The notes: generated by a model not told the origin, from the sequence alone. DNA of 64,000 nt from IMGVR_UViG_3300034117_001582:124001-188000, one strand, 5' to 3'; positions 1-49,957 are shown, counted from the first letter of the stretch. Made by a program: numbers and translations.

Positions 1-96
1 TTTGTATTTTGGATAATAATATGTATTTAAATTTTGAGTTGGCATTCTTTTTTTAGATAAATACTTTATATGAAGGTATTTATAGGTAAAGCCTGC

Positions 97-846
97 ATGA
101 AAACATATAAATATTCAACAAAAGAAAGAGCGGAAAGGGTTTCTAAAACTTTGGGATGTTCGGGTTCTCACTATCACAATGAGGATGGCGATAGAAAATA
201 TATGCCATGTAAGTCTCACAACATATTCTTATCTAAAACTAAAAAAAATAAAAAAGGGGAAGAACAAGAAGTCACCGAACTTGTTGATGCGGATGGTACG
301 TGGTTATCATCGAATACCCCAATATTAGATCCGGCAAGTACGGGTGTGGGCACAAAAACTATGGACCAAATCATACCGGCAGCAAGAAATCCAAGAGACC
401 CGTTGATGAGAGGGTGGTACGGTTATTATGGTGAAGGTCGTGTTAAAGAAGAAGACATGTCTAAAGCATTTGGATATAAGAATACAAAAAATATGGACGC
501 TAAAGAAACTCTTGATTACTTCAAAGATGAATTAGAAATGGATGATGAATCCGCCGAACACAGAGTTGAGGATGAATTTGGTAAAAGTCCCGAAAGAGAT
601 AAAAAATCTAAATTTAAAAACAAAAAAGGATTTGTTGGAAGACCAATACTTAAAGAAAAAGAAAGTGAAGATATTGCCGAAGACGTATTAGTTGATAAAG
701 AAACAAACGACCAAGAAAATATTAAGAAAAGAGTATTAGATATTAATCCACTTTTAGTTAGAAATATTAAGTCAATTAAAAAAATGGCAAAAGAAAATGG
801 AATAACCGTTAGGGAATTAATAATGATGTTAAAAGATGAACAGTAA
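97..846 (+). CDS. hypothetical phage protein with GCxGxHxH...YMPCxxH putative metal-binding motif
   Basis: ORF 70..846; ATG at 97 preferred because TATTTATA lies at 77-84; Cys/His motif near N-terminus. Confidence 0.7.
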   Translation: MKTYKYSTKERAERVSKTLGCSGSHYHNEDGDRKYMPCKSHNIFLSKTKKNKKGEEQEVTELVDADGTWLSSNTPILDPASTGVGTKTMDQIIPAARNPRDPLMRGWYGYYGEGRVKEEDMSKAFGYKNTKNMDAKETLDYFKDELEMDDESAEHRVEDEFGKSPERDKKSKFKNKKGFVGRPILKEKESEDIAEDVLVDKETNDQENIKKRVLDINPLLVRNIKSIKKMAKENGITVRELIMMLKDEQ

Positions 847-1288
847 TCTATACGATAGAATTGCAATCATACCGGATTCATTGGTTAAACACTTAAATGA
901 TTGTTTTGGATCAACTGAAGGTGATAATAATGTTGAGGGTTATAAAAGAAACCAAGATTTAAGAAAATCAAGAAAGGCAACATACCAACAAATTAAAAGA
1001 ATTAAAAGTTGGTTTGATAGTTATGGTGGAAATAAAGAAGACGCTCCATTTATATTAAATGGTGGTGATAGAATGCAACAATGGTGTGATGAGGTTTTAA
1101 GGGTTTGGAGAGACAACGATTTAAGTGGAAAAAAATTAAAAATGGATACAGGAATGCAAAACCAATTTTTAGATTCACACGAAAAAAATAGTTTTAACTT
1201 AAACGATAAACACGGAACAACCGTAGATGATTTAAAAGTTAACGAGGATGTTAATAAAATTAATAAACTAATGAAAAAAATAATATAA
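836..1288 (+). CDS. hypothetical phage protein
   Basis: 150-aa ORF overlapping upstream stop; IKRIKSWF...LNGG..M..W motif. Confidence 0.7.
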   Translation: MNSNLYDRIAIIPDSLVKHLNDCFGSTEGDNNVEGYKRNQDLRKSRKATYQQIKRIKSWFDSYGGNKEDAPFILNGGDRMQQWCDEVLRVWRDNDLSGKKLKMDTGMQNQFLDSHEKNSFNLNDKHGTTVDDLKVNEDVNKINKLMKKII

Positions 1289-1582
1289 ATGGCAAATCAA
1301 TCAGACAAGTTAGATTTTTCACAACCTGATAATGCGTTATCACAAATTGCTGAAGAACAAAGAAAAAAACTTTTCCCAAGAAATGACTTTAAACCTACTG
1401 ACCCATATTCGTCTGTTCATCCTGATGCAATTGCAAATGGTGATAAGATTGGTAGAGGAACTGGTGGTGACTTAGATATTTATAACCAACAAGCGGGAAC
1501 ATCAACAGACATTACAGAAAGAAAAGACGATTTAAAAGTTAATAAATTCTCATCTAATAACCCATACTACACGGTAACATGA
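1289..1582 (+). CDS. hypothetical protein
   Basis: 97-aa ORF abutting neighbours. Confidence 0.7.
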   Translation: MANQSDKLDFSQPDNALSQIAEEQRKKLFPRNDFKPTDPYSSVHPDAIANGDKIGRGTGGDLDIYNQQAGTSTDITERKDDLKVNKFSSNNPYYTVT

Positions 1583-2013
1583 AACTAGTTAGGAGTTTAA
1601 GTAAAGTAATTACTGAAGTGGCAGCTTTAGATAATGTTCAAAGTAGCATTAAACAAAAGAATATTATCACGATTAATTATGATGGTGACGAGTACGGTAA
1701 AGGTTATCGTGACGTTGAGCCAGTTTGCTTAGGAATTAGTAAAGCCGGTAATATGGTTTTAAGGGCTTGGGAAAGACAAGGGTCTTCACACTCTAATAAG
1801 GTTGATGGTAACCCAATTCCAGGATGGAGACTTTTTAGATTAGATAAAATATTGACTTATGCTTTACAAGGTGATAGTTTTACAGAAGTTAGACCTAAAT
1901 ATAACCCTAACGGTGATAGGTCAATGGAAAGAGTTATTTTAAATGCCGTATTTGATTACACACCAAATACAGATGACATAGAAAATATCGATAATATAGA
2001 AAATATAACATAA
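1579..2013 (+). CDS. stand-alone WYL-domain protein
   Basis: RDVEPVCLG...LRAW...GWRLFRLDKI matches the WYL pattern R.VEP..L...L.A...R.FRLDRI; no HTH. Confidence 0.75.
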   Translation: MKLVRSLSKVITEVAALDNVQSSIKQKNIITINYDGDEYGKGYRDVEPVCLGISKAGNMVLRAWERQGSSHSNKVDGNPIPGWRLFRLDKILTYALQGDSFTEVRPKYNPNGDRSMERVILNAVFDYTPNTDDIENIDNIENIT

Positions 2014-2014
2014 C

Positions 2015-2635
2015 ATGGGAGCAGCAGAGGACTTAATGCAAAGATTGGCAGTATCCAAAAAAATAATGGAGAAAACAGAAGGAATACAAAGGGGGGCAAT
2101 AGATTCAAGACATATTAATTCACCTAGAGTTGAGGAGTTTCAACCCGTACAAGGAAATTACAACATACCACAAGAATACTTACAGGAAAATTCAACACCT
2201 AAATCGTCATACGACGCAACAAAACCACTTGAGTCAGATAGAATTAAAAATTCAAAGTTACCTGACGAAATTAAACAATTAATGATTGAAAGACCAATTA
2301 TTCAACCGTCTTCATCATCACCAACAATTTCAAATGACATTATAGAAGGGGCACAAAGACTAATGAATATGAATTCAAGTAATAATACACAACAAAAAAA
2401 ACCTATTACTGAAAATGTAAAAACAAATAACGTTAGTTCTAATATTAATATGAATGAAATGAAATCAATAATTCGTGACGTTGTAAGAGATACGGTAAGA
2501 GATGTGGTTAGAGAAGAATTAAAAGATGCTGGAATGTTAGTGGAATCAACCACAGACTCAAATGAGGTAATACAATTTAAAGTGGGAAAACATCTATTTG
2601 TTGGTAGAGTAACTAAAGTTAAAAAACTAGCATAA
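2015..2635 (+). CDS. hypothetical protein
   Basis: 206-aa ORF in operon, followed by terminator. Confidence 0.7.
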   Translation: MGAAEDLMQRLAVSKKIMEKTEGIQRGAIDSRHINSPRVEEFQPVQGNYNIPQEYLQENSTPKSSYDATKPLESDRIKNSKLPDEIKQLMIERPIIQPSSSSPTISNDIIEGAQRLMNMNSSNNTQQKKPITENVKTNNVSSNINMNEMKSIIRDVVRDTVRDVVREELKDAGMLVESTTDSNEVIQFKVGKHLFVGRVTKVKKLA

Positions 2636-15830: not shown

Positions 15831-16571
15831 ATGACGACAAGAAAAAAACCACAAACACAAACTGAAGATAATGAACAAAAACAAGTTTCTAAAAAAGATT
15901 TTATAAACTCAACAATTAAAAGAAAACAAAAAAGTAAATTTTTATCTGATAATCAAAAAGAATATTACGATTTACTGATTAATAATCAAATAACTATTTG
16001 TTCCGGACCTGCAGGTGTTGGTAAAAGTTATATTTCCATGAAGGCTGCCGTTGATTTATTAATGGACCCAAATAACTCATATGAAAAAATAATTATCGTT
16101 AGACCGGCAGTCGAAGCCGAAGAAAAATTAGGGTCATTACCTGGTAATTTAGAAGAAAAATTGGACCCGTATATTTTTCCTTCATATTATTTATTAAATA
16201 AGATTATAGGTAAGGAAGCAAGAGAAAAATTAAAAGAGGGTGAGGTTATTGAAGTATTTGCATTGGCCTACATGAGGGGTATGAATATAGACAACTCAAT
16301 TCTTATTTTTGAAGAGGCTCAAAATTCAACACCCAATCAAATGAAACTACTATTGACAAGAATAGGATTTAATAGTAAATTCTTTATATCAGGTGACTTG
16401 GAACAAACTGACAGGTATAAAGATAAAAAACAATCAGGACTTTATGACGCATTACAAAGGTTCAATAAAATACCAGATATTGGTATTTACGATTTTAAAA
16501 ATGCTAAAAACGTTAGAAATCCATTAATTAGTAAAATATTAGTCAAATACGATGAAGAAAATAGGGATTGA
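15831..16571 (+). CDS. phoH: PhoH-family ATPase
   Basis: GPAGVGKS, RPAVE, LGSLPG, AYMRG, EEAQN, LTRIG, GD..Q.D. Confidence 0.95.
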   Translation: MTTRKKPQTQTEDNEQKQVSKKDFINSTIKRKQKSKFLSDNQKEYYDLLINNQITICSGPAGVGKSYISMKAAVDLLMDPNNSYEKIIIVRPAVEAEEKLGSLPGNLEEKLDPYIFPSYYLLNKIIGKEAREKLKEGEVIEVFALAYMRGMNIDNSILIFEEAQNSTPNQMKLLLTRIGFNSKFFISGDLEQTDRYKDKKQSGLYDALQRFNKIPDIGIYDFKNAKNVRNPLISKILVKYDEENRD

Positions 16572-18563: not shown

Positions 18564-19373
18564 ATGGAAAAAGAAAAATTAGACGTATCGGTAATTTTAC
18601 CGATTAACTCATCAAAACAAAGAGATTTTGATATACTATTTGAAAGGGCCGTTAAATCATTACAAATACAATTAACAGACATTAATGAGTTGGTTATTGT
18701 TCATACAGATGAGGACGGTTTAAAGTCAAGATTAGAGGAATACGATTATAGTGGTATCACTGTTAATTTTATTGAAAATAAAGGTGATTTTGATTTTAGC
18801 TCACAAGTTAATTTAGGTGTTAAAAACGCAAAAAGTAAGTGGGTATCCATTTTAGAATTTGATGATGAATATTCAAGCATATGGTTTAAAAATGTTAATA
18901 GATTTATTAAGGCATATCCTGAAGTGGACGCATTTTTACCATTAGTAGTCGATACAGATGAAAAAGGTATGTTTGTTGGGTTCACAAATGAAGCAACATT
19001 TGCGGCAAGTTTAAATTCAGAAATCGGGTATCTAACAAATGATGTTTTAATGGCTTACCAAAATTTCCAATCAAGTGGTATGGTAATAAAAAAAGAAACA
19101 TATTTAGAAAACGGTGGGTTTAAATCTTCTATGAGATTAACATTTGTTTATGAATTCCTTTTACGATTAACTTACAACTCTGTAAATATTATGACCATTC
19201 CTAGAATTGGTTATAAACATATGAACTTAAGAGAAGGGTCAATTTTTTGGAATTATAAAAATGGTAACGAAAAGATTTCAGACAAAGAAGTTTCATTTTG
19301 GATTGAGTCGGCAAAAAAAGAACATTTCTTCACTTCAGATAGAAATATAAAGTTTGAACCTGAACAAGCTTAA
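18564..19373 (+). CDS. GT2 glycosyltransferase
   Basis: VSVILP, NLGV, ILEFDDE, GGF. Confidence 0.8.
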   Translation: MEKEKLDVSVILPINSSKQRDFDILFERAVKSLQIQLTDINELVIVHTDEDGLKSRLEEYDYSGITVNFIENKGDFDFSSQVNLGVKNAKSKWVSILEFDDEYSSIWFKNVNRFIKAYPEVDAFLPLVVDTDEKGMFVGFTNEATFAASLNSEIGYLTNDVLMAYQNFQSSGMVIKKETYLENGGFKSSMRLTFVYEFLLRLTYNSVNIMTIPRIGYKHMNLREGSIFWNYKNGNEKISDKEVSFWIESAKKEHFFTSDRNIKFEPEQA

Positions 19374-20128
19374 TGATTTTATCATCAGTAACAGAAAATG
19401 AAATAATTAACGAAACGCAAAAGACGGAAAAAAAACCAAAATTAACTACAAATTATTTTGATGTCCGTGAAGAAGAAGCGGTTAAAGCTTATTTAATAGC
19501 TGAAACCAAACAAGAAAAAGATTCAATATACAACGAGTTTCTTCGTAGTCCACTGGATAAAATGATAGAGTCAATTATTAGAAGATATAAGTTGTATAGA
19601 AAAGATATGACGTATATTGATATTCACGCAGATACACATTCTTTTTTAATGACAAAAGTTGATAAGTTTAAACCGGCAAAGAATAAAAAAGCATATTCTT
19701 ATTTTGGGACGATTTGTAAAAACTATTTGATGGGTCAAATATTGAAAGACCAAAAAGAAATGAATAGAAAAATATCTTATGAAGATATTTCTGCAACATT
19801 AGAAAATAGACCAGACATGGTTTATTATTTAGAGTTTGAAAAAATAGATGCTGAAAAAATTATAGATATATTTTTAGTTGATTTAAAAAATTATATTGAA
19901 AAAAACAATTTACCCGATAACGAAACAAAGATGGGTCACGCGTTAATTGATTTATTTGATGACTATGGTAATATTTTTATTGGTAACGATAATAATAAGT
20001 TTAATAAGAATATTGTTCTATTGACGTTAAGAGAAATGACAAATCTTAACACAAAAGAAATTAGAACATGTTTAAAAAAATATAAAACGGTTTATTTAGA
20101 TACGTTAAGAAGAATACATAATCAATAA
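19373..20128 (+). CDS. T4 gp55-like late-transcription sigma factor
   Basis: KFKPAKNKKAYSYFGTICKNYLM resembles the gp55 region-2 pattern (F..K...FAYFT.I); N-terminal NYF. Confidence 0.65.
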   Translation: MILSSVTENEIINETQKTEKKPKLTTNYFDVREEEAVKAYLIAETKQEKDSIYNEFLRSPLDKMIESIIRRYKLYRKDMTYIDIHADTHSFLMTKVDKFKPAKNKKAYSYFGTICKNYLMGQILKDQKEMNRKISYEDISATLENRPDMVYYLEFEKIDAEKIIDIFLVDLKNYIEKNNLPDNETKMGHALIDLFDDYGNIFIGNDNNKFNKNIVLLTLREMTNLNTKEIRTCLKKYKTVYLDTLRRIHNQ

Positions 20129-20144
20129 ACAAATATTTATTGTT

Positions 20145-24270: not shown

Positions 24271-24292
24271 GTATTTATATAAAAAAGTTAAT

Positions 24293-26948: not shown

Positions 26949-26971
26949 ATCTATAAATATCCAACTAAACA

Positions 26972-26998
26972 AAAAAAGGGACAATAAATTGTCCCTTT
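26972..26998 (-). terminator. intrinsic terminator after major capsid gene
   Basis: AAAGGGACAAT-AA-ATTGTCCCTTT hairpin with T run on minus strand. Confidence 0.8.
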
Positions 26999-27021
26999 AG
27001 TGTTATTCTTTAAGCTTTTGA

Positions 27022-28830: not shown

Positions 28831-28870
28831 TTTTATTTTTTTTTAAATTGAGTTTATTTTATTTTATTTA

Positions 28871-30421: not shown

Positions 30422-30522
30422 TTGTAAATTGCAATGCGTTATCGTTTATTTACAGATAAATATACCGACATAGTAAAAAATTTACTATTTTACTCGATAT
30501 AAACAAAAAAAAATATTATGCA

Positions 30523-31509: not shown

Positions 31510-31530
31510 AGTATATTTTTATGATAAATA

Positions 31531-31980: not shown

Positions 31981-32087
31981 TCTTCATACCTTATCTGTTT
32001 ATTGTTTTTATAATGGTAAGTGAAAAAATAAGATTTGTCAAAATTCAAAAAAGTTTGTATATTTATATATAAAAACAAGAAAAATTT

Positions 32088-33303: not shown

Positions 33304-33327
33304 AGTGTTTTTATTTATAAATATTTA

Positions 33328-35139
33328 CTAACTCAGTAAATCCTTCAACTTGTCGTTGATTTCTGTTAATGAGTTTCTTCCTTTCGCTAAATCCATATAA
33401 TCACTACCCCCAAATAAATGGTCTTCTAATAGCATATTTAAATCATTTTTATTAAACCCTTCAGGGGTTACTCCACCGCCAGGAGGGGCGTCAGGGGGAG
33501 GTGCTTCAGCTCCACCACCCATATCAGGCATTCCACCCATGTCACCACCAGCACCACCAGCATCAGCTCCAGCTTCACCCGCAGGCTCACTTTCTTTTTT
33601 ACCATATAGTTTATCTATATTATCAAATAGACCTGTTTTAGTGATAACTTCAGCAGTTTTACCTAATTCTGCAGACACCGCTCTCTCAACTCTTTGTTGT
33701 TGTAAATCCAATCTGATTTCTTCATCTGAGAACCCTAAGATATGTTTCTTAGCCCAAGATGCAGATACAGGTGCTACCGTGTTTGGAATTTCAGCAACCG
33801 CATCTTTATATAATGTTATCTTTTCTTTCCATAATTCAATACCCAATAAGTCGGATTGTTTTGATGGGTTATGTAATCCTAACGTAAAGTTTGTTAATTC
33901 ATCCTCAAACCCTAATAGAAAAAGGTGAATGATTGCTATTTTATTTAATTCGGCAATCATACACTTTTGAATTCTGTTGATTGTTCTTGCAAAACGAATA
34001 TCTAATAATGATAAGTTTTTACCATCACCAACAGCCTCTTCAAATCCTAAATATGCTTTAGGAATTCTTAATGCCGTAACTAATTTCTTTTGAATATACT
34101 CAATATCCGCAATCTCCGCCAAGTTTGTTCCACCAGGTAACGTTTCAATTGGGTTGGTTGCTGCTGCATCCCTAACAGGGATAAAATAATCTTGATCTAC
34201 CGCCAATTGGTTATATCTCATATCAACATTACCTGTTTGGGGGTCTGAAATTTGGTCTCTTTTAAATTTACTTGCAACTCTTTGTACGTATGGGTCGACA
34301 TCTTTATCGTCCATGTTTCCAACAAATACTTTAAACACTCTTCTTTCAGGTGCTCTTGATACACGATAAATTAACATCGCATCTTCTGATAATAAAAGTT
34401 GTTTCCAAATACGACGTGATTTTTCTAACATAGAGGTACCATATGGAAGTTTTCTGTCGTCACCTAAAATTCTAAAGTGAGCAACCTCCCATGTGTTAAA
34501 TTCCATATTCTTTTCTTTCCAAGTAAATTTCAAAGCATCATTCTCCATTTCTTGTGAATACTTGTCAGGTTGGAATCTCATACCCTTTTCCAATCTTTCT
34601 ATTTGAATGTTAGGTAATTGTTGACAACCAACGATTCCTTTTTCTGGATCCAATTTTAAATAAACAAAGTTATCACCAAACTTACATGTGTTTCTTGTCC
34701 ACATTGGTAGGTTTGTGCTAATATCTAATTTATTATTAAACAAATCGGCCAATACTGATTTTATTCTTTTTGACTCTGAATAAATTTGTAATATATGTCC
34801 GTCTTTATCTGGTGTTGTAGATTCTTCACCGTAGATATCTAACGCCGCTGAAATTTCAGGAGTATATTCCATACTTTCGTAGTCATAATATGAGGCCAAC
34901 CTTGTTGGTTCATAATAAACCGCTTGTTGGTATAAATTGCCCTCAACCTTTTGCCATTGTTTACCAATGTACATTGTTTGCTGTGATTGTAGTTTTTCCC
35001 TTTCAAACTCAGCCTTATCTGTTGTTTTTAATAGTTCTTTTTTGTCGAACTTAAAGACAGGTGATTGTTGGTCCAAAGTGGCATTAGGTCCAAAAACCTT
35101 ACCTAACCTTTGCCATACCGTCATTTTATCTTGTGCCAT
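33328..35139 (-). CDS. portal protein (T4 gp20-like)
   Basis: PEISAALD, EDAMLIYRVSRAPERRVF, DYFIP, IETLPGG.NL. Confidence 0.93.
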   Translation of the reverse strand: MAQDKMTVWQRLGKVFGPNATLDQQSPVFKFDKKELLKTTDKAEFEREKLQSQQTMYIGKQWQKVEGNLYQQAVYYEPTRLASYYDYESMEYTPEISAALDIYGEESTTPDKDGHILQIYSESKRIKSVLADLFNNKLDISTNLPMWTRNTCKFGDNFVYLKLDPEKGIVGCQQLPNIQIERLEKGMRFQPDKYSQEMENDALKFTWKEKNMEFNTWEVAHFRILGDDRKLPYGTSMLEKSRRIWKQLLLSEDAMLIYRVSRAPERRVFKVFVGNMDDKDVDPYVQRVASKFKRDQISDPQTGNVDMRYNQLAVDQDYFIPVRDAAATNPIETLPGGTNLAEIADIEYIQKKLVTALRIPKAYLGFEEAVGDGKNLSLLDIRFARTINRIQKCMIAELNKIAIIHLFLLGFEDELTNFTLGLHNPSKQSDLLGIELWKEKITLYKDAVAEIPNTVAPVSASWAKKHILGFSDEEIRLDLQQQRVERAVSAELGKTAEVITKTGLFDNIDKLYGKKESEPAGEAGADAGGAGGDMGGMPDMGGGAEAPPPDAPPGGGVTPEGFNKNDLNMLLEDHLFGGSDYMDLAKGRNSLTEINDKLKDLLS

Positions 35140-35179: not shown

Positions 35180-36958
35180 TTAAACTCTTCCTCCACCGAA
35201 TAACCATAAATACTTTTCATAATCGCTTTTGGATGCTTCTTGTCTACCATAATTCATGTTATTATAGGTGTTGGCGGGTAATCCAGGATTGAAATTTTGA
35301 GAACTATCTTTAAATGTATTTTTTTCGGTAGTCCAAGATTCCAACATCGCCTTTGTTTGTTCTGTTGCCTTTTCTAATTGTGCAAAAGAAGTTTCACCAA
35401 CAAACACAGCCATAGCAAATGCCATGATTAAGTCATCGTGTTGTCCTTTTTGGTGGTCGGGTCTACCATTTACATAAACAAACGTATTCAGTTCGTTAAA
35501 TAGTCTTTGTGACCTTAACGCAAAATCAAATCTTAATGCCTCTTCAAACGCTTGAATTATTAAAATACGTTTTGAATTAAAGTTAATCCCCGGTATTTTG
35601 TCTTGCGATTTTGGATCCCATTTCCATTTATCCGCAGGGTTAACACCATCTATGTATAGATTTTTATATCCTAATTCTTGTAATTTTCTTGAGGTGGATA
35701 CTCCCATACCACCAGTAATATCAGTAACAATAAATGAGTTATACATTGTCGCCCATTTAAACGCAATTTCCGCCAATACATCCGGTGGGACTTTTCCTAT
35801 ATATTCTAATACTTGTTCTCTAGCATCAAAATCAATAATAGATATGGTACTAAAATCTTCACTATCCCCTCTTGAAACGTCAACACCCATTATATATCGA
35901 TGTCCTTCTACTGGTTCTTTCCATTGCCAAATCGATCCACCCATAAATTTGTTTTCAGGCTCCTTAATATGGTTTTCTTTAATTTTTTTCATGGTTTCGG
36001 AAGGAATAACACTATCCCCCGAACCTAAAAAGTTACATTCAAGTTCTTGTGAAATTTTTCTTTTATCGAACTTTAATTTTTTAGCCATTGACTCAAACCA
36101 AGAACTATAAGGTTTATACCCCTCGTTTTCAACTTTTAATTTAATCTCTTTAAAATCCCTGTCACCTACTTTAATGTCTGAATAATCTAATATGATTTCA
36201 CTATCATTATAATCGCCTCTATTTAACATGTAATGAACAATATCATTACATTTAATAAGTTTTAAATCTTTAGAATAACGTGGGTCACGAAACCAATACA
36301 TTTCAGTAATCCTAAAGTCATTCATACCTTTAATGGCCTGACTAAATATTGAATAGTAGATTGGGTCAAACCCGTTTGGAGTTGAAATAACAATTACCTT
36401 ACCACCTGTAGATAGAGACGCCATACAAGCAGACCAAAAGTCTTCATCGGCGTTAATGTATGCTGCCTCATCAAATATTAATATTGTTGGTGTATAACCA
36501 CGCAAAGCATCCTTTGATGTTGCAACTGCCTTAACCTCACATCCATTTGTTAATTTAAAATGTCTTTGTGAGTTCTTTTCGGTAGAAAAGGTAACACCTA
36601 ACCAAGATGGCCATTGGTCAACAAACGCTCTAACCTTATTTCCCATTTCTTGGGCGGTGTCCATTTTGTTTGCAATAATTAGAATTTTTTCTGGTTTTGA
36701 TTTTTTAGCAAACACTAATCTTTTTGATGCCCAAGCAGACGTTACGGTAGATACTCCAGCCTGACGATACTTTAATGCGATATTTTCCTCACAAGTATCG
36801 TAATCCTTAACCAACGTAACTTGGTCATTAAATAATTCTAATGGTACGTATTTAGATTGTGTGTTATCGTAAGTTTGTAGATAGGTTTTAAGTGCGTACG
36901 GAGTATCGTTTATACACTTAGCATACTCTAATAATATTTGTTCTTTTGATAAAGACAT
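35180..36958 (-). CDS. terminase large subunit (gp17-like)
   Basis: KYRQAGVST, LIFDEAA, ISTPNG, QELEC.F, GVDVSRG, HDDLIMA. Confidence 0.93.
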   Translation of the reverse strand: MSLSKEQILLEYAKCINDTPYALKTYLQTYDNTQSKYVPLELFNDQVTLVKDYDTCEENIALKYRQAGVSTVTSAWASKRLVFAKKSKPEKILIIANKMDTAQEMGNKVRAFVDQWPSWLGVTFSTEKNSQRHFKLTNGCEVKAVATSKDALRGYTPTILIFDEAAYINADEDFWSACMASLSTGGKVIVISTPNGFDPIYYSIFSQAIKGMNDFRITEMYWFRDPRYSKDLKLIKCNDIVHYMLNRGDYNDSEIILDYSDIKVGDRDFKEIKLKVENEGYKPYSSWFESMAKKLKFDKRKISQELECNFLGSGDSVIPSETMKKIKENHIKEPENKFMGGSIWQWKEPVEGHRYIMGVDVSRGDSEDFSTISIIDFDAREQVLEYIGKVPPDVLAEIAFKWATMYNSFIVTDITGGMGVSTSRKLQELGYKNLYIDGVNPADKWKWDPKSQDKIPGINFNSKRILIIQAFEEALRFDFALRSQRLFNELNTFVYVNGRPDHQKGQHDDLIMAFAMAVFVGETSFAQLEKATEQTKAMLESWTTEKNTFKDSSQNFNPGLPANTYNNMNYGRQEASKSDYEKYLWLFGGGRV

Positions 36959-39610: not shown

Positions 39611-39654
39611 AATATTTTTTTATATAAATATACGGATAATTTGTATTTTTATTT

Positions 39655-40404: not shown

Positions 40405-40421
40405 ACATATAAATACCTATG

Positions 40422-40977: not shown

Positions 40978-41089
40978 AACTATAAATATAACTAAAAAAA
41001 AAACTAAAGAATATTGGGGTATGGTTAAAACAATTAAAAGATTGATTATTTAACTACTTATGTTTAATATTTTCTAAAAACAATTTGAT

Positions 41090-43135
41090 ATGATAGATTC
41101 GGCGGACGGAACAGAAAAACCAAAAAACAAAAACCAAGACGGTTCAGGAAAAACACCAGTTTTAGATAACTTTTCAAGGGATTTAATTAAATTGGCGGAA
41201 GAAGGGAAATTAGATCCGGTTATTGGTCGTGAGGATGAAATAAATAGAATAGCTCAAATACTTTCAAGACGCAAGAAAAATAACCCAATTATTTTAGGTG
41301 AACCTGGTTGTGGTAAAACTGCAATTGTGGAAGGGTTGGCTAAGAAGATTTTTGAAGGTGATTGCCCACAAAATTTAGCAAATAAAAGAATTGTTTCTTT
41401 GGATATGACCTCAATTGTTGCGGGGACAAAATATCGCGGTCAATTTGAGGAAAGAATGAAAGTAATAATTGAAGAATTATACGCAAACCCTGATATCATT
41501 ATTTTCATAGATGAAATCCATACAATGATTGGTGCAGGTAATTCATCAGGATCTATGGATGCGTCAAACATATTCAAACCAGCACTTTCTCGTGGTGAAT
41601 TACAATGTATTGGAGCGACAACATTAGAAGAATATAGAAAGAACATTGAAAAGGACGGAGCATTAGAAAGACGTTTCCAAAAAGTGATTGTGGACCCATC
41701 AACAAAAGAAGAAACATTAATAATATTACAAAACTCAAAAGATAGGTACGAAAAACACCACAAAGTATCCTACAGTGATGATATTTTAAAACTATGTGTT
41801 GAGTTGGCGGATAGATATATTACCGATCGCGAATTCCCTGATAAAGCATTTGATATTATTGATGAGGTTGGTGCTCGTTCGCAGGTGGAAATTAAACTAC
41901 CTGAAATTATTGAGGATTTAAAAAAACAAGCACAACTAATTAAAGAAGAAAAGTTGGATGTGATTAACAAACAAAAATATGAGGAGGCTGCAAATCTTCG
42001 TGACAAAGAAAGAAAAATATTAGCCTATTTGGCAAAAGAAAAAGAAAACTTTGAAAATAATAGAGACCAAAATAAAAGGGTAGTAACCGAAGATGTTGTT
42101 TATGATGTTGTTTCGTTAATGACAAAAATACCAATTAACAAAATTACAAGCGATGAAACACAACAATTAATCACATTAAAAGAAACTTTATCGACTAAAG
42201 TTATTGGTCAAGAGGACGCGGTAGCAAAAATATCAAGATCTATCCAAAGAAATAAAGTAGGATTAAGTGACCCTAAAAAACCAATTTTTAGTGGTTTATT
42301 AATTGGTAATTCAGGTGTTGGTAAAACGGAATTAGCAAAACAATTGGCAAAACATATGTTTAATAGTGAAGATGCACTTATCAGATTAGATATGAGTGAA
42401 TTTTCAGATAAAATTGCGACATCAAAATTAACAGGTACCTCACCAGGTTATGTTGGATATGAAGATGGTTCACCATTCTTAAACAAAATTAAAAATAAAC
42501 CTTATTCAGTTATTCTTTTAGATGAGATTGAAAAGGCTCACCCTGAAATCTTTAACGTATTTTTACAAATGTTAGATGAAGGGTTTTTAACTGATGGTCA
42601 CGGAAGAAAAATCAACTTTAAAAATTGTATTATATTAATGACTTCTAATGTTGGTACTAGAGTCGTACAAGATTTTGGTACTGGCGTTGGTTTTACCACA
42701 AGTACAAAAATTGAAAGACGTGAGGATGAAATAAAATCAGTTTTAGAAAAAGAATTATTTAAAAAGTTTGCACCTGAATTTATAAATAGGTTTGATGACA
42801 TTGTATATTTCAAAGACTTAAACGAAGAAGACTTATTAAAAATTGTTGATTTGGAACTTAACAAATTCTATGAGAGAATTGGTCAATTAGAGTTTCAAGT
42901 TGAGGTTGACGATACTTTGAAAAAACACTTAACTGAAGTTGGTACTGACACTAGATTTGGGTCTCGTATTCTAAAACGTACCGTTCAAAAGTGGGTGGAT
43001 GATGCAATTACGGAAAAGATTTTAACTGATAATCCAGAAAAGGGATCAACTTTTATTCTAACATACAATGAAAAGGATAAAAAGACTGACGTTAAAATAA
43101 AAAAACCAACAAAAAGAAAAACAAAATCACAATAA
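41090..43135 (+). CDS. clpC: ClpC-like AAA+ ATPase lacking N-terminal Clp repeats
   Basis: GEPGCGKT/FIDEIH, UVR-type M domain, GNSGVGKT/LLDEIEKAH, GYVG pore loop, VGF ClpP-docking loop. Confidence 0.88.
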   Translation: MIDSADGTEKPKNKNQDGSGKTPVLDNFSRDLIKLAEEGKLDPVIGREDEINRIAQILSRRKKNNPIILGEPGCGKTAIVEGLAKKIFEGDCPQNLANKRIVSLDMTSIVAGTKYRGQFEERMKVIIEELYANPDIIIFIDEIHTMIGAGNSSGSMDASNIFKPALSRGELQCIGATTLEEYRKNIEKDGALERRFQKVIVDPSTKEETLIILQNSKDRYEKHHKVSYSDDILKLCVELADRYITDREFPDKAFDIIDEVGARSQVEIKLPEIIEDLKKQAQLIKEEKLDVINKQKYEEAANLRDKERKILAYLAKEKENFENNRDQNKRVVTEDVVYDVVSLMTKIPINKITSDETQQLITLKETLSTKVIGQEDAVAKISRSIQRNKVGLSDPKKPIFSGLLIGNSGVGKTELAKQLAKHMFNSEDALIRLDMSEFSDKIATSKLTGTSPGYVGYEDGSPFLNKIKNKPYSVILLDEIEKAHPEIFNVFLQMLDEGFLTDGHGRKINFKNCIILMTSNVGTRVVQDFGTGVGFTTSTKIERREDEIKSVLEKELFKKFAPEFINRFDDIVYFKDLNEEDLLKIVDLELNKFYERIGQLEFQVEVDDTLKKHLTEVGTDTRFGSRILKRTVQKWVDDAITEKILTDNPEKGSTFILTYNEKDKKTDVKIKKPTKRKTKSQ

Positions 43136-43161: not shown

Positions 43162-43169
43162 TATCTTTG
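43162..43169 (+). promoter_or_regulatory. Bacteroidota sigmaA -7 element
   Basis: TATCTTTG matches TAnnTTTG, 15 nt before ATG at 43185. Confidence 0.6.
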
Positions 43170-43184: not shown

Positions 43185-44219
43185 ATGAATATAGATAAAT
43201 TTAAGGAACTTCTTTCAGTGCCGTCAAAGACATATCAAGAAGAAGATATGGTTGAGCACATCTGCAACGAGTTAGACTCGATTGAGGGTGTTATGTATTA
43301 TCGAGACGAGATGATGAATGTCTACGCAACTAAAGGTGTGTTAGAGGAAGGTGAATACTACCCTATGTTCATTGCACATACAGATACCGTACACACAAAG
43401 ATTGATAAAATTGTTGTTAAAGAAGAAAAACTTAAACGACCAAATACCTTTGGAAAAACTTTTGATGATACCTTAGTTGATGTTTTAAAGGCATATGATG
43501 AAGAAGGGAACCCAACAGGTATTGGTGGTGACGATAAATGTGGGATTTTTATTTGTTTAGAATTACTTAAACAATTAGACAAAGTAAAAGTTGGTTTGTT
43601 TGTGTCTGAAGAAACGGGTTGTCACGGATCATCAAAATGTGATGAGAGTTTTTTAACAGATGTTGGTTATATTACCCAGTATGACGCCCCTGGTAATCAC
43701 CTAATTTCCGAGATTTGCTCGGGAGTTCGTTTGTTTGAAAGAGATAGTGAATTCTTTGAAAAAAGTATTTCAGTAATCGAAGCAGCATTTGGAAATGAAA
43801 TGTTAGTTCAATCACACCCATATACTGATGTATCACAATTAAAGAAAAAGATTGACGTTTCTTGCATCAACATGTCTTGTGGTTACTACAACATGCACAC
43901 AAAAGAAGAATTCATTTCAATTGATGATGTTGAACGTGCAATTGAGGCAGGAAAAAATATGGTTTTTATCTTGGGATTAAATAAACACCAATACGAATAC
44001 AAACCAATTGTTTATACTAATAAAACAATTATGAATTCTTTAGTGGAGGAAGATTTTGATGAGGATATTATCCATCAGTTAGAAACTATCGATGTTGAGG
44101 AAAATAAAGATGGTATCACCATTATTGATCCGTTTGATGGGAATGCTATGTTTATCAATGATGATGATTTGGTTTACTTATATGATATCATTAAAGAAAG
44201 ATTACTTAAAAAATATTAA
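43185..44219 (+). CDS. M20/M28-type zinc peptidase/hydrolase
   Basis: AHTDTVH, GGDDKCG, SEETGC, YD, NMHT..E. Confidence 0.8.
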   Translation: MNIDKFKELLSVPSKTYQEEDMVEHICNELDSIEGVMYYRDEMMNVYATKGVLEEGEYYPMFIAHTDTVHTKIDKIVVKEEKLKRPNTFGKTFDDTLVDVLKAYDEEGNPTGIGGDDKCGIFICLELLKQLDKVKVGLFVSEETGCHGSSKCDESFLTDVGYITQYDAPGNHLISEICSGVRLFERDSEFFEKSISVIEAAFGNEMLVQSHPYTDVSQLKKKIDVSCINMSCGYYNMHTKEEFISIDDVERAIEAGKNMVFILGLNKHQYEYKPIVYTNKTIMNSLVEEDFDEDIIHQLETIDVEENKDGITIIDPFDGNAMFINDDDLVYLYDIIKERLLKKY

Positions 44220-45364: not shown

Positions 45365-45429
45365 ATATTTATAAATATATTGTTTAATAGAAAGAATTAT
45401 CTTATCTTTACAATAGTTCTTTGATATAT

Positions 45430-46819: not shown

Positions 46820-47974
46820 TTAATAATAAATACTTTTATATTTTAATTTTTTCTTTGTTGTGTAAAAATAGTTTTCATTTGTTGTTTGCCCTGTGGTCGT
46901 AACTTGTGTTTCAGTTTGCCCTGTGGTCGTAACTTGTGTTTCAGATTGACTAATTGCCTCAAGTTCTGTTTGTGCTTGTTGAATCGCATCTTTACCTTTT
47001 GACATATCTGCTTTTAATTTTTTCTTTGCCCAAGAATCCCCTTGAGAAATTAATTTGTTAACGTTTGCAAATTTTTCAATCGCTTTTGGTAAAAACTTTT
47101 TTACGATATCGTATATTTTTGGCATTTTTTTAATTGATTCTACTGCCTGTGAAATTCCAGACGACATAATGTTTTTAAGCGGTTGTAAAAATTTCGTAAG
47201 ATAACCATTAGATAATAACGCAAAAATATCAATCAATAACAACATCCAACTACCCTTTCCACTTATGGCCATATAAGCATCATATATGGTTAAAGCTCCC
47301 CACGCTACCGTAGTGGCAATTGCTCCTATACCTGTAAAACTTAAAAATTTTTGTACAAGGGCACCCATAGGACTATTTAATGCGTTTCTTAAACCTGCAA
47401 AAAACTTATCAAACCCCGTTTTTTTTATTTTTTCGGCAACTTGGTCATCAGATAAAGTTTGTTGTGTTACTGACTGTCCACCATTAAATGGTATTTTTTT
47501 TTCAATCTCTTTAGATAGTTCACCTTCAGCACCGTACCATTGTTCAGTATTTTTTAATCTCCACGCATATTTTTTTTCTCCACTTTCAAAATATAATTTA
47601 AAGTCGTATTGTGGATTTGTTTTTATATCAATTTGTTCTGTTTTTTGGGTTTCTGATTGTTCTAAAATAAAATTTTTAAAATTTTTAAATTGTGAGTCGG
47701 TAAATATTTTGATATTTTCTTCATTTTCTAAAATGAGGTTATTTAAGTTTTTTTTACTATACTCCAAAATCTTTTTCTTTGGGTATCCAATAGATTTTAA
47801 ATTATCCTCTATTAGTTTTTGAACGTATTTTTTTTGTTCGTATTTACCTTTTATAAAACAACCAAAAGTTGCATCACAAATTCTTTTTTGAAATTCTAAC
47901 GACTCATTTATTGATGAAGTATTTAATTTTTTTGATAACTCTTTTAATTGGTTGTCCGTTAAAATAATTTTCAT
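46820..47974 (-). CDS. putative head-internal/ejection protein with hydrophobic hairpin
   Basis: leader IILTDNQLKE..INES; hydrophobic stretch TGIGAIATTVAWGAL...MLLLIDIFALL; exact 30-bp duplication at 46884-46943. Confidence 0.6.
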   Translation of the reverse strand: MKIILTDNQLKELSKKLNTSSINESLEFQKRICDATFGCFIKGKYEQKKYVQKLIEDNLKSIGYPKKKILEYSKKNLNNLILENEENIKIFTDSQFKNFKNFILEQSETQKTEQIDIKTNPQYDFKLYFESGEKKYAWRLKNTEQWYGAEGELSKEIEKKIPFNGGQSVTQQTLSDDQVAEKIKKTGFDKFFAGLRNALNSPMGALVQKFLSFTGIGAIATTVAWGALTIYDAYMAISGKGSWMLLLIDIFALLSNGYLTKFLQPLKNIMSSGISQAVESIKKMPKIYDIVKKFLPKAIEKFANVNKLISQGDSWAKKKLKADMSKGKDAIQQAQTELEAISQSETQVTTTGQTETQVTTTGQTTNENYFYTTKKKLKYKSIYY

Positions 47975-48002
47975 TAATTTTTTTTTTATTTATATAAATA
48001 TC

Positions 48003-48514: not shown

Positions 48515-48583
48515 AATTTTTTTTTAATTTTTTTTATTTATTATCTTTCCATATAAATATATCGTACTTTAAAAAAAGATTCG

Positions 48584-48591
48584 TATATTTG
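48584..48591 (+). promoter_or_regulatory. Bacteroidota sigmaA -7 element
   Basis: TATATTTG 5 nt before ATG; second copy at 48005-48012. Confidence 0.6.
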
Positions 48592-48596
48592 TAATT

Positions 48597-49103
48597 ATGC
48601 AAACATTTCTTCCATACTCAGATTTTAGAAAATCTTTAGAATCTCTTGATAACAAACGATTAGGTAAACAACGCGTTGAGGCTTATCAGATAATTTCAGC
48701 AATTACGGGTCGACCAAAAAAGAACGGACAACCTTATAAAGGGTGGATATCTCACCCATGTTCGGTAATGTGGAAAGACTATGTGAATGCGCTTAAACTA
48801 TACTACAACGATTGTATTGATGTGTGGGTGTCTCGTGGTTTTAAAAACACAATGCAACATGAACACATTGAAGGTGAGTTTGTTTTACCTCATTGGTTGG
48901 GTGATGAAGAGTTTCATTCATCACATAGATCTAATCTATTACGTAAGGATTTTGATTATTATACAAAACACGGGTGGTTAGATAACCCTGACGACCCATA
49001 CGTGTGGATGGATAATCAAGGATTGTGGTACAAACAAATTGCTGGTACTAAAGAAAGGATTTATTATAAACCAAATATTATATTAGAATCCGTTGGTTGT
49101 TGA
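48597..49103 (+). CDS. pyrimidine-dimer DNA glycosylase/EndoV-like (MSMEG_6728 family)
   Basis: MQTFLPY..F..S...LD.KRLGKQRVE..QI, HP...MW, SHRSNLLRKD. Confidence 0.85.
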   Translation: MQTFLPYSDFRKSLESLDNKRLGKQRVEAYQIISAITGRPKKNGQPYKGWISHPCSVMWKDYVNALKLYYNDCIDVWVSRGFKNTMQHEHIEGEFVLPHWLGDEEFHSSHRSNLLRKDFDYYTKHGWLDNPDDPYVWMDNQGLWYKQIAGTKERIYYKPNIILESVGC

Positions 49104-49928
49104 ATTATAGAAAACCAATCCTGTTACGTTAGTTGTTTTTGAGATAGTTGGGGTTGAGTAATTAAATGTCATTACATCACCTCCACCCTGTTCTCCAAAT
49201 TGTATTCTGATTGGATAATAAGTCTCCGCGGTTAATGATGCAGTTCCTGACCGTTCTTGATTTGCGTGTAAACCCCCATTTTTTACTGTCGCATTTAAAG
49301 TAGTAAACCCTGTTATCGCAATATCACCGATCCACATATATGAAGCATCATCCGATGACGTAAAGAATGCGTAGGTTTCCGTTGTTGTTGGTTTGAAATA
49401 ACCTAACCATTGACAACTAAAATTAGATCCATCATCTTGGGCTGGTTCAAATATAGAAGTGGTTTGTACTGATGTTGCCGGATTTCCACCTACCGATGCC
49501 GGAGTTGCAGTTGCAAAGAAACTAACGTTATCGGCAAAATATCCAGAGTAGGTTGTTTTAAATACACCAGCAGTATAAGGTAAAACCCAAGAAGTCCAAT
49601 ACCCATTTGTAGTTAAATACGATGAACACTGAGTAGTTCCGGTAAATGTTTGATTAAATACAGAATTAACTAAATTAATAAATGATTGGTCTGTTTTTAA
49701 TTTTGACCTTGAAAATCTAATATAAGCTGGCACATTGTCAGGGTTAGGTTGATTTCCACTAGTGTTTGGTCTACAAATAACATATCCTAAATCTTCATCG
49801 GGACCATTCCACCATCTAGGGTTTCCAGTAAATCCTGATGATGGCGTACCAACGGCCAATGAACCAATTTGTGTTGTTCCTGATATCGTTGAACCTGTGT
49901 TATATGCGAAAGGTCTTGCAGTTGCCAT
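49083..49928 (-). CDS. PA14-domain virion protein
   Basis: FSCQWLGYF.P....Y.F...SDDAS..WI, NGGLH, YPIRIQFGE.GG. Confidence 0.8.
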   Translation of the reverse strand: MATARPFAYNTGSTISGTTQIGSLAVGTPSSGFTGNPRWWNGPDEDLGYVICRPNTSGNQPNPDNVPAYIRFSRSKLKTDQSFINLVNSVFNQTFTGTTQCSSYLTTNGYWTSWVLPYTAGVFKTTYSGYFADNVSFFATATPASVGGNPATSVQTTSIFEPAQDDGSNFSCQWLGYFKPTTTETYAFFTSSDDASYMWIGDIAITGFTTLNATVKNGGLHANQERSGTASLTAETYYPIRIQFGEQGGGDVMTFNYSTPTISKTTNVTGLVFYNSTTNGF

Positions 49929-49957
49929 TATTGTTGTTTAACAATAAATACCAGTAA

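What the first reader, a model, noticed from the sequence alone, without database searches (positions are those of the whole stretch)
77..49950. Late promoter motif TATTTAT(A), the reverse complement of T4's TATAAATA, with very short leaders
Seen: TATTTAT(A/C/T) on the coding strand 3-40 nt before starts at 77, 20134, 24272, 32060 (+) and 26952, 30455, 31523, 33316, 39623, 40408, 40981, 45370, 46825, 47993, 48552, 49943 (-). A gp55-like sigma (19373-20128) is in the window. Known: T4 gp55 reads TATAAATA. Inference: a gp55-family sigma with altered specificity. Spacers of 3-5 nt imply near-leaderless late mRNAs.
Basis: partly seen in the sequence, partly recalled or inferred. Interest (0 to 1): 0.65.

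Follow-up and report, generated by a model that had tools for sequence, protein, structure and literature searches.

The report
Phage-specific TATTTAT promoter heptamer
A strictly conserved seven-base signal, TATTTAT, lies just upstream of about a hundred genes of this 292-kb T4-related lake phage of Bacteroidota and of its relatives. It is most likely the promoter read by a phage-made sigma factor, and it often sits so close to the start codon that the messages would have no leader.

Summary
TATTTAT is not over-represented in the window as a whole (52 copies, 52 expected). But 15-16 copies lie within 45 nt upstream of a same-strand start, against 1.1 expected. Across the 291,867-bp phage genome it is the top upstream 7-mer: 99 of 342 genes against about 9 expected. 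In intergenic spacers it occurs 86 times against 16.7 in shuffles. Every one-mismatch variant stays at background. The heptamer is invariant at orthologous sites in 80/80 and 78/78 related contigs. It precedes virion genes in the cultured Flavobacterium phage immuto, and Rhodothermus phage RM378 has a near-identical TATTTAA. A second class, the host Bacteroidota sigma-A type (TTG plus TAnnTTTG), marks other genes. ORF 19373-20128 is a sigma-70-family protein with weak gp55 affinity. "Reverse complement of T4" is a coincidence of a near-palindrome; the motif differs from TATAAATA only at its two central bases. No -35 element is present. About a third of the promoters sit 4-6 nt from the ATG, which implies leaderless mRNA. 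Three points are unsettled. "Late" is only partly supported, because some replication genes carry the motif. The sigma-to-motif link is inferred, and a second, canonical sigma lies elsewhere in the genome. No transcription start site (TSS) was mapped.

The parts
77..83 (+). TATTTAT heptamer, 13 nt before the in-frame ATG at 97. It is the only recognisable promoter of the 28-gene block 97-20128.
19373..20128 (+). Gene for a 251-aa sigma-70-family protein. Residues 28-133 form a sigma region-2 domain. It has weak gp55 (phrog_234) affinity. The C-terminal four-helix domain is only weakly sigma-4-like.
20134..20140 (+). Heptamer 4 nt before ATG 20145, directly after the sigma stop codon. It is invariant at this place in 80 of 80 related contigs.
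24272..24278 (+). Heptamer 14 nt before ATG 24293. It is invariant upstream of the ortholog in 78 of 78 related contigs.
32060..32066 (+). Heptamer 21 nt before ATG 32088.
26953..26959 (-). Heptamer 4 nt before ATG 26948, placed directly after the terminator that follows the capsid gene.
26978..26995 (-). G+C-rich hairpin followed by a T run, read as an intrinsic terminator after the major capsid gene. Metatranscriptome contigs stop at 27008.
30456..30462 (-). Heptamer 34 nt before ATG 30421, heading the operon 28871-30421 plus the gp23 capsid gene 27022-28830. Lake metatranscriptome contigs end at 30432 and 30440, and summed depth collapses upstream.
31524..31530 (-). Heptamer 14 nt before ATG 31509 of the prohead protease gene.
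33317..33323 (-). Heptamer 13 nt before ATG 33303. It is part of the palindrome TATTTATAAATA at 33312-33323.
35206..35212 (-). Candidate only: heptamer 66 nt before the portal gene start at 35139, inside the 3' end of the terminase gene.
39624..39630 (-). Heptamer 13 nt before ATG 39610.
40409..40415 (-). Heptamer 4 nt before ATG 40404.
40982..40988 (-). Heptamer 4 nt before ATG 40977.
45371..45377 (-). Heptamer 6 nt before ATG 45364. It is part of the palindrome at 45366-45377.
46826..46832 (-). Heptamer 13 nt before ATG 46812.
47994..48000 (-). Heptamer 19 nt before ATG 47974.
48553..48559 (-). Heptamer 38 nt before ATG 48514.
49944..49950 (-). Heptamer 15 nt before ATG 49928.
43162..43169 (+). 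Contrast class: host-type Bacteroidota sigma-A -7 box (TATCTTTG), 15 nt before ATG 43185.
48584..48591 (+). Contrast class: host-type -7 box (TATATTTG), 5 nt before ATG 48597.

Best explanation
R-TATTTAT-W is the single, -10-like core element of the phage-specific (post-early) promoters of a large clade of T4-related phages that infect Bacteroidota. Host RNA polymerase most likely reads it with the phage's diverged, gp55-related sigma, whose gene is window 19373-20128. No -35/-33 element is involved. Early genes use ordinary host sigma-A promoters instead (TTG, about 19 nt, TAnnTTTG).

Transcription would start about 5-7 nt after the A at heptamer position 6. Where the heptamer lies 4-6 nt from the ATG, the mRNA begins at or within 1-2 nt of the A of AUG and is leaderless. 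That covers about one third of cases here and 41% in the pooled clade. The other main class, with a 13-15 nt spacer, has a leader of roughly 8-10 nt, which suits hosts that do not use Shine-Dalgarno pairing.

Shown: enrichment, strand and position bias, strictness, conservation, the two promoter classes, and the sigma fold.
Inferred: which sigma reads the motif, the exact start sites, and the timing.
For: Statistics and strictness:
- Upstream, strand-aware enrichment.
- 263 non-redundant promoters pooled from the genome and 80 related contigs show no -35 signal. They show only an AT-only W-T-W patch 14-16 nt upstream.

Conservation:
- The heptamer is the top upstream 7-mer in 80 related contigs, 274 genes against 29.7 expected.
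- It is invariant at orthologous sites while its flanks and spacers vary: 80/80 after the sigma gene and 78/78 before the gene-24293 ortholog.
- It is present directly after sigma homologs that are only 30-31% identical, in 2 of 3 contigs.

Cultured relatives:
- In Flavobacterium phage immuto it precedes the terminase, portal, sheath, tube, hub and tape-measure genes. It stands before 19/61 genes in virion modules against 11/151 elsewhere (odds ratio 5.8, p = 3.6e-5).
- Immuto's early region instead carries about 25 TTG-plus-box promoters.
- RM378 uses TATTTAA in the same way, with TATTTA before 17 of 54 genes against 1.6 expected.

Second class and spacing:
- This genome has 25-30 host-type promoters with the same spacer modes.
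- In Flavobacterium psychrophilum TAnnTTTG occupies -12 to -5 (PMC9723704). A 4-nt spacer therefore puts +1 on the A of ATG.

Sigma:
- The family profile hits SigA region 2, ECF (extracytoplasmic-function) sigmas and T4 gp55 chain 7d7c_F.
- 29/76 relatives match Pfam Sigma70_r2 and 16/76 match phrog_234.
- hhalign against T4 gp55 gives E = 1.4e-4.
- The AlphaFold2 model has mean pLDDT 90.5. In both the Foldseek and the VIA-align lists the top fold matches are almost all sigma factors; the VIA-align top 50 are all sigma factors.
- Immuto has this sigma (28% identity, E = 4e-17, annotated as hypothetical). It sits in an operon behind the last early promoter and lacks the second, canonical sigma.

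Transcripts:
- Lake metatranscriptome contigs cover 27008-30440 and stop 16-24 nt from the heptamer at 30456-30462. Summed contig depth falls from 44-361 to 0-11.
Against: - No start site was mapped. The RNA runs were available only as contigs, which cannot show 5' ends.
- In this genome the sigma gene sits at the end of a 20-kb block whose only visible promoter is itself a TATTTAT. Its first expression is unexplained.
- The window protein itself gets no hit in direct Pfam or PHROG scans. Similarity to gp55 is weak: 17.4 bits and hhalign probability 52%.
- No gp45 clamp or gp33 was detected.
- The motif also precedes the DnaB helicase gene and lies 61 nt upstream of the family-B polymerase gene, so it is not a purely late signal.
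- With T4's geometry (+1 six bases after the 8-mer), promoters with a 4-5 nt spacer would start inside the ATG. The register must therefore differ from T4 by 1-2 nt.
Confidence: 0.6

Rival explanations
1. The heptamer is a promoter, but another factor reads it. Candidates are the phage's second, canonical sigma-70-like protein (genome 41958-42773, minus strand, outside the window) or host sigma-A redirected by a phage protein. The 19373 protein would then serve a different, unrecognised promoter class.
For: - The second sigma carries regions 1.2, 2 and 4 and matches SigA at E = 8e-44.
- It lies in an operon behind a host-type promoter, as an early activator would.
- It is conserved in three jumbo relatives.
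- The gp55-like sigma gene has no visible early promoter in this genome.
Against: - Phage immuto uses TATTTAT before its virion genes. It has no Sigma70_r2 match at E <= 0.1 and no tblastn match to the second sigma, but it does have the gp55-like one, placed in an early operon.
- A sigma with a canonical region 4 would be expected to need a -33/-35 element, and these promoters have none.
- Only two enriched promoter classes were found, and the host-type class fits a SigA-like protein.
Confidence: 0.2
2. The heptamer is the promoter of a phage-encoded RNA polymerase that sequence searches cannot see, for example a giant crAss-type virion enzyme.
For: Two giant ORFs (2431 and 2148 aa, genome 90039-104087) have no Pfam hit, and they were not scanned against PHROGs. 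Some phage RNA polymerases read short AT-rich motifs next to the start site (my own knowledge of the phiKZ and AR9 systems).
Against: - No beta-subunit-like (PF00562) match was found. PF00940 (T7-type) also gave nothing, but its control was uninformative.
- The phage carries two sigma factors, which only make sense with host core enzyme.
- Immuto (160 kb) and RM378 (130 kb) use the same core motif, and their records annotate no RNA polymerase beyond a small 'subunit N'-like ORF in immuto.
Confidence: 0.05
3. The heptamer acts at the RNA level, as an endonuclease processing site or a translation-initiation enhancer, and not as a promoter.
For: It lies close to start codons. Contig ends near 30440 could equally be processed ends.
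Against: - The spacer ranges from 4 to 38 nt in distinct modes, which is unlike a ribosome-positioning signal.
- With a 4-nt spacer, an RNA containing the motif would need yet another promoter upstream. Many sites follow a terminator hairpin directly.
- Host-type promoters in the same genome show the same spacing modes.
Confidence: 0.05
4. It is a chance product of AT-rich intergenic DNA.
For: The total count in the window equals the shuffle expectation. The genome is 32% G+C.
Against: - In intergenic spacers alone there are 86 copies against 16.7 +/- 4.0 in shuffles, with a sense/antisense ratio of 86/24.
- One-mismatch variants stay at background.
- The heptamer is invariant in 80/80 and 78/78 orthologous sites.
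- The same core is enriched in a 43% G+C phage.
Confidence: 0.01

Closest known systems
T4 late promoters (TATAAATA) read by gp55, with gp33 and the gp45 clamp
   Same: - A single, very strict -10-like element with no -35 conservation.
- A phage-encoded, highly diverged sigma-70 relative with a region-2 domain.
- A phage with gp23, gp20, gp17 and gp21 homologs.
- The motif precedes virion genes.
- In the hhalign register, four of the six mapped gp55 promoter-pocket residues are kept: L54/I68, R57/R71, F86/F99 and Y97/Y110. Y97 stacks on the A at -12.
   Different: - The core differs at the two central bases (TT for AA), and the eighth base is free.
- gp55 H95 (the -9 pocket) and T99 (the -8 contact) are replaced by Y108 and G112.
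- The sigma is 251 aa, has an extra C-terminal domain and lacks the SLDFL-type clamp-binding tail.
- No gp45 or gp33 was found.
- The motif also stands before some replication genes.
- It lies 1-2 nt closer to the start point than in T4.
Bacteroidota primary sigma-A promoters (-33 TTG, -7 TAnnTTTG)
   Same: An AT-rich box ending about 5 nt before +1. About 55% of the phage motifs read TATATTTAT, which overlaps TAnnTTT. The hosts do not use Shine-Dalgarno pairing.
   Different: The G is invariably replaced by A-T. There is no -33 element. True TAnnTTTG promoters coexist in the same genome before other genes, and only 3 genes carry both.
Rhodothermus phage RM378 upstream motif TATTTAA (found here; no report of it in the library searched)
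   Same: The same TATTTA core, the same position 7-25 nt before starts in the virion-gene region, and a phage-encoded sigma (Rm378p144).
   Different: The seventh base is A, not T. The sigma is 199 aa and barely alignable to this family. Only 50 kb of that genome was examined.
Sigma cascades of large phages (Bacillus phage SPO1 gp28, then gp33/34)
   Same: Host sigma-A is used for early genes. Phage sigmas then redirect the host core enzyme. This genome has two phage sigma genes.
   Different: SPO1 sigmas read two-element promoters. The order and targets of the two sigmas here are unknown.
Leaderless mRNAs of Actinobacteria and Deinococcus, where the -10 box sits about 6-7 nt before the ATG
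   Same: The spacing between promoter box and ATG is fixed and places +1 on the A of AUG.
   Different: The host phylum differs. In Flavobacterium psychrophilum only 5.5% of mRNAs are leaderless (PMC9723704), against about a third of this phage's promoters at that spacing.

Membership tests
T4-type late promoter | A single -10-like element with no conserved -35 region | tested here: met
   263 pooled promoters: information content is 0.1 bit or less from -50 to -17. The only upstream signal is a W-T-W patch at -16 to -14.
T4-type late promoter | The sequence TATAAATA on the coding strand | tested here: not met
   The core is TATTTAT. TATAAAT and ATAAATA in sense orientation stand before 29-36 genes against 8-9 expected, the same 3-4-fold excess as other AT-rich words.
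T4-type late promoter | Stands before late (virion) genes and not before early or replication genes | tested here: inconclusive
   - In the window it precedes the capsid operon, the prohead protease and other head-region genes.
- In immuto it is enriched 5.8-fold in the virion modules.
- In this genome it also precedes the DnaB gene, lies 61 nt before the polymerase gene and precedes many unassigned genes.
T4-type late promoter | Activation through the gp45 sliding clamp and the gp33 co-activator | tested here: not met
   phrog_223 gave no match. PF09116 gave only a 14.9-bit hit inside an SbcC-like gene. gp33 was not searched for. Divergent homologs cannot be excluded.
gp55 family (phrog_234, late sigma) | Sigma region-2 homology domain | tested here: met
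   Model residues 28-133 superpose on sigma-2 domains at rmsd 2.5-3.0 A over 93-97 residues, Z about 9. 29/76 relatives match Sigma70_r2.
gp55 family (phrog_234, late sigma) | Significant match to the gp55 family profile | tested here: inconclusive
   - Six-frame search of the genome: E = 5.4e-4, 17.4 bits.
- Direct scan of the protein: no hit.
- 16 of 76 relatives hit, best E = 7.5e-6.
- hhalign against T4 gp55: E = 1.4e-4, probability 52%.
- The PDB profile search ranks SigA (E = 0.005) above gp55 (E = 0.11).
gp55 family (phrog_234, late sigma) | No sigma-4 domain, and a C-terminal clamp-binding motif | tested here: inconclusive
   - The C-terminal 100 residues fold with pLDDT 87.6. Foldseek finds nothing.
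- The wide search puts sigma-4 domains (3mzy, 2h27, 6ono, 3vep) at Z 4.4-5.8 among unrelated helical proteins.
- No SLDFL-like tail is seen when the two sequences are read side by side.
Bacteroidota sigma-A promoter | TAnnTTTG at -12 to -5, plus TTG about 19-21 nt upstream | tested here: not met
   The heptamer has A-T where the G should be, TATTTGT is a separate class, and there is no TTG upstream. The genome's own TAnnTTTG promoters do show T-T-G at -23 to -21.
Leaderless mRNA | Primary 5' end at the A of the start codon | not testable with these tools
   Only spacing is available. 34 of 99 promoters here and 107 of 263 pooled lie 4-6 nt from the ATG. The RNA runs were held as contigs only.

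The most novel reading that the evidence does not exclude
A whole lineage of T4-related phages of the Bacteroidota-Rhodothermota group uses its own late-transcription system. It would consist of a re-specified gp55-like sigma that reads TATTTA(T/A) instead of TATAAATA through changed -9 and -8 pockets, and that works without the gp45 clamp or gp33, possibly because it has kept or gained a flap-binding C-terminal domain. This system would be coupled to unusually frequent leaderless translation in hosts that lack Shine-Dalgarno pairing.
Probability: 0.35. Interest if true: 0.7.

Novelty: new variant of a known kind. Interest (0 to 1): 0.55.

Why it matters
- The sigma family has more than 1,000 cluster representatives at 50% identity at E <= 0.001. 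A word search of metagenomic proteins returned 8,000 matches, the scoring cap. Its phages are transcribed in lakes. A seven-base rule that marks about a hundred transcription units per genome would help annotate these largely unassigned genomes: start codons, operons, and early versus phage-specific genes.
- It offers a natural specificity variant of the T4 gp55 system, with candidate residue changes at the -9 and -8 pockets. That makes a long-studied recognition problem testable by swaps.
- It gives a compact, probably orthogonal promoter and sigma pair for Flavobacteriia, where genetic tools are scarce.
- The frequency of leaderless spacing, about a third of promoters against 5.5% of host mRNAs in F. 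psychrophilum, is a lead on translation initiation without Shine-Dalgarno pairing.

Tried and rejected
- Megablast of 8 kb against GenBank phages found no match.
- Direct Pfam and PHROG scans of the 19373 protein found nothing. The family signal came only from relatives and profiles.
It was rerun with the single protein.
- Calling the C-terminal domain sigma-4 was rejected as unproven. Foldseek is blank and the wide search gives only Z 4.4-5.8, mixed with unrelated helices. The sequence profile finds nothing in the PDB.
- Searches for a T4-type clamp (phrog_223, PF09116), phrog_12791, family-A polymerase, a beta-like RNA polymerase subunit and a T7-type RNA polymerase were negative or uninformative.
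- PHROG annotation of 20 large genes outside the window gave functions for only seven. A clean early/late functional test in this genome was therefore not possible and was done in phage immuto instead.
- No host-type promoter was found upstream of the sigma gene.
- TSS mapping from public reads failed because all RNA runs were held as contigs. Only contig ends and presence could be used.
- Literature searches for this motif, for promoters of immuto or RM378, and for late promoters of Bacteroidota phages found nothing relevant. The library misses most subscription journals.
- Only genetic code 11 was used.

Full report
**What the window is.** The window is bases 124001-188000 of a 291,867-bp IMG/VR virus record judged 99% complete. 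G+C is 32%.
- It encodes a gp23-type major capsid protein (27022-28830, minus strand), a gp20-type portal (33328-35139), a T4-type large terminase (35180-36958) and a prohead protease (30799-31509).
- Only 18 of 342 genes have a Shine-Dalgarno-like 4-mer, and the upstream regions are A-rich with A at -3.
- The closest cultured relatives by capsid protein are Flavobacterium phage immuto (40% identity) and Rhodothermus phage RM378 (34%).
- Parts of the window are held by lake-water metatranscriptomes.
- The host is therefore most likely a freshwater member of Bacteroidota. This is an inference.

**The observation.** All 16 sites are present. The count in the window is not above chance: 52 copies against 52.25 in shuffles.
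- In the window, 15 copies lie within 45 nt upstream of a same-strand ATG, against 1.1 expected. It is 16 if the first gene starts at the in-frame ATG 97.
- In the whole genome TATTTAT is the most enriched upstream 7-mer, before 99 of 342 genes against 8.8 expected.
- Against an AT-matched background of 162 co-directional intergenic spacers it occurs 86 times in sense and 24 times in antisense. Dinucleotide shuffles of the same spacers give 16.7 +/- 4.0.
- The exact heptamer is enriched about 15-fold, and none of its 21 one-mismatch variants exceeds about 3-fold.
- The logo is R-TATTTAT-W. The eighth base is A in only half of the cases.

**Spacing.**
- Heptamer-to-ATG distances are bimodal, with a sharp peak at 4-5 nt and a second at 13-15 nt.
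- In 263 non-redundant promoters pooled with relatives, the counts are 57, 36 and 14 at 4, 5 and 6 nt, and 21, 28 and 18 at 13, 14 and 15 nt.
- In the window only five sites are at 4-6 nt.

**A second promoter class gives the contrast.**
- Intergenic regions without the heptamer often carry TAT(A/C)TTTGT.
- This box is preceded by T-T-G at -23 to -21, which is the Bacteroidota sigma-A -33/-7 promoter. It stands before 25-30 genes. Only three genes carry both signals.
- In Flavobacterium psychrophilum TAnnTTTG occupies -12 to -5 (PMC9723704).
- Ten of this phage's host-type promoters sit 4-5 nt before the ATG, so +1 falls on the A of ATG. The heptamer class shows the same spacing modes. This is the best sequence-level argument that both are promoter boxes and that the short-spacer genes give leaderless mRNA.
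- That paper reports only 5.5% leaderless mRNAs in the host species, against 34 of 99 heptamer promoters at that spacing here.

**Conservation.**
- In 80 related viral contigs whose sigma is 64-88% identical, TATTTAT is again the top upstream 7-mer: 274 genes against 29.7 expected.
- Directly after the sigma stop codon the heptamer is present in 80 of 80 contigs, 4-7 nt before the next ATG. The flanking and spacer bases and the spacer length vary.
- Upstream of the ortholog of gene 24293 it is present in 78 of 78 contigs.
- Two of three short contigs whose sigma homologs are only 30-31% identical also carry it just downstream of the sigma gene.

**Cultured relatives.**
- In phage immuto (160 kb) TATTTAT stands before 33 genes against 3.8 expected. 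These include the terminase, portal, sheath, tube, hub and tape-measure genes.
- It precedes 19 of 61 genes in the virion modules against 11 of 151 elsewhere (odds ratio 5.8, p = 3.6e-5).
- Immuto's 60-76 kb region of small ORFs carries about 25 near-identical promoters with a TTG-containing upstream box about 19 nt before TATATTTAGGTAT. This is plainly a different, early class.
- In the 50-kb virion region of RM378 (43% G+C) the top upstream hexamer is TATTTA, before 17 of 54 genes against 1.6 expected. It occurs there as TATTTAA 7-25 nt before starts.
- The TATTTA core is therefore shared across this phage lineage and differs by lineage at the seventh base.

**Transcripts.**
- Four lake metatranscriptomes, available only as contigs, cover 27008-30440 (the capsid gene and the gene before it) at summed depths of tens to thousands.
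- Contigs end at 30432 and 30440, and depth falls to 0-11 beyond 30400. The heptamer is at 30456-30462.
- At the other end, a contig from run X1 begins at 27008, next to a terminator hairpin at 26978-26995.
- This fits a unit that starts just downstream of the heptamer. Contigs cannot prove a start site, and DNA carry-over cannot be excluded.

**The sigma.**
- The 251-aa product of 19373-20128 has no direct Pfam or PHROG hit. The gp55 family profile finds it in the genome at E = 5.4e-4.
- Its family is large: 1,070 representatives at 50% identity clustering.
- A 76-member profile hits SigA region 2 (E = 0.005), ECF sigmas and T4 gp55 (E = 0.11) in the PDB.
- 29 members match Sigma70_r2 and 16 match phrog_234. 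hhalign against T4 gp55 gives E = 1.4e-4.
- The model has pLDDT 90.5. Nearly all of the best fold matches are sigma factors, and residues 28-133 superpose on sigma-2 domains at 2.5-3.0 A.
- The C-terminal 100 residues form a confident four-helix domain. Its resemblance to sigma-4 (Z 4.4-5.8) does not stand out from unrelated helical proteins.
- There is no SLDFL-type tail such as gp55 uses to bind the clamp, and no gp45 was found.

**How the specificity change might work (inference on a weak alignment).**
- T4 gp55 flips the adenines at -12, -9 and -8 of TATAAATA into pockets lined by N13, L54, R57, F86, H95, Y97 and T99 (PMC7892883).
- Written in the same register, TATTTAT keeps the A at -12 and the A at -8 and changes -10 and -9.
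- In the hhalign register L54, R57, F86 and Y97 correspond to the conserved I68, R71, F99 and Y110. H95 (the -9 pocket) and T99 are replaced by the conserved Y108 and G112.
- The start-point geometry must differ from T4 by 1-2 nt. Otherwise promoters with a 4-5 nt spacer would start inside the ATG.

- "Reverse complement" is a by-product of a near-palindrome.
- The motif is not confined to late genes here. It precedes the DnaB-type helicase (28 nt upstream) and lies 61 nt before the family-B polymerase gene. It is common in regions of unassigned small genes such as 205-240 kb.
- A second sigma gene, a canonical sigma-70 type with regions 1.2, 2 and 4, lies at genome 41958-42773 in an operon behind a host-type promoter. 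It is conserved in three jumbo relatives.
- I assign the heptamer to the gp55-like sigma for three reasons. Immuto has that sigma, in an early operon, but not the canonical one, and still uses the heptamer. The promoters lack the upstream element that a region-4-bearing sigma would read. The host-type class is the natural target of a SigA-like protein.
- How the gp55-like sigma gene is first transcribed in this genome is unexplained. It ends a 20-kb, 28-gene block whose only visible promoter is a heptamer.

**Verdict.**
- The motif is a real, strict, clade-wide promoter core (confidence about 0.85).
- That it is read by the window's sigma is likely (about 0.6).
- That it is "late" in the T4 sense is only half supported.
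- The leaderless inference for the short-spacer subset is well founded on geometry but unmapped.
- I found no description of this motif in the papers I could search.

Noticed in passing
genome G000:C1:41958-42773 (minus strand), outside the window; locus L136:1081-1896: A second phage sigma gene of canonical sigma-70 type (regions 1.2, 2 and 4; SigA E = 8e-44). It sits in an operon behind a host-type promoter. It is present in three jumbo relatives and absent from phage immuto.
   Followed up: partly
window 97-20128 (+): A 28-gene, roughly 20-kb co-directional block with overlapping or abutting genes and no internal promoter of either class. It holds a family-2 glycosyltransferase (18564-19373), matches to immuto sugar-modifying genes, a PhoH homolog (15831-16571) and, at its end, the sigma gene.
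   Followed up: partly
window 57308-64000 (-), continuing beyond the window to genome 190067: A 2919-aa ORF made largely of collagen triple-helix repeats (Pfam Collagen, E = 1e-201). One stretch is 56% identical to part of an immuto gene annotated as tail fiber. G+C rises to 41-45% here.
   Followed up: partly
window 50918-55411 (+): A 1497-aa protein with at least two glycosyltransferase domains (GT1 and GT9 families). It has no promoter motif in its 33-nt divergent upstream region.
   Followed up: no
window 41090-43135 (+): A 681-aa ATP-dependent protease homolog (phrog_4871, E = 3.5e-223), followed by a peptidase-like gene (43185-44219) behind a host-type promoter.
   Followed up: no
window 33312-33323 and 45366-45377: Perfect palindromes TATTTATAAATA, which place a heptamer on both strands. 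Only the minus-strand copy faces a gene.
   Followed up: partly
14-16 nt upstream of the heptamers (pooled, 263 promoters): A three-base AT-only patch (W-T-W) with G+C of 3-8% per position. It is the only upstream conservation, and what contacts it is unknown.
   Followed up: partly
phage immuto, MW353175.1: about 20 sites at 60.9-76.2 kb, plus 22094 and 25514 (loci L125, L126): About 22 near-identical early-type promoters with a TTG-containing box about 19 nt before TATATTTAGGTAT, each ahead of a small ORF. The gene annotated as hypothetical, immuto26A_153 (78174-78872), is the homolog of the window's sigma.
   Followed up: partly
Rhodothermus phage RM378, NC_004735.1 80001-129908 (locus L144): TATTTAA stands 7-25 nt before many genes of the virion region: 26 copies in 50 kb, most of them facing a start. 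The annotated sigma factor Rm378p144 lies next to the capsid gene.
   Followed up: partly
genome G000:C1:90039-104087 (minus strand): Two adjacent giant ORFs (2431 and 2148 aa) next to the tail genes, with no Pfam match. They were not scanned against PHROGs. Their function is unknown.
   Followed up: no
window 27022-28830 (-): The gp23-type capsid protein is 602 aa. The Pfam Gp23 model matches only residues 328-587 plus a short N-terminal piece, so the protein carries a large insertion or extension. It is by far the most heavily covered stretch in the lake metatranscriptome contigs.
   Followed up: no
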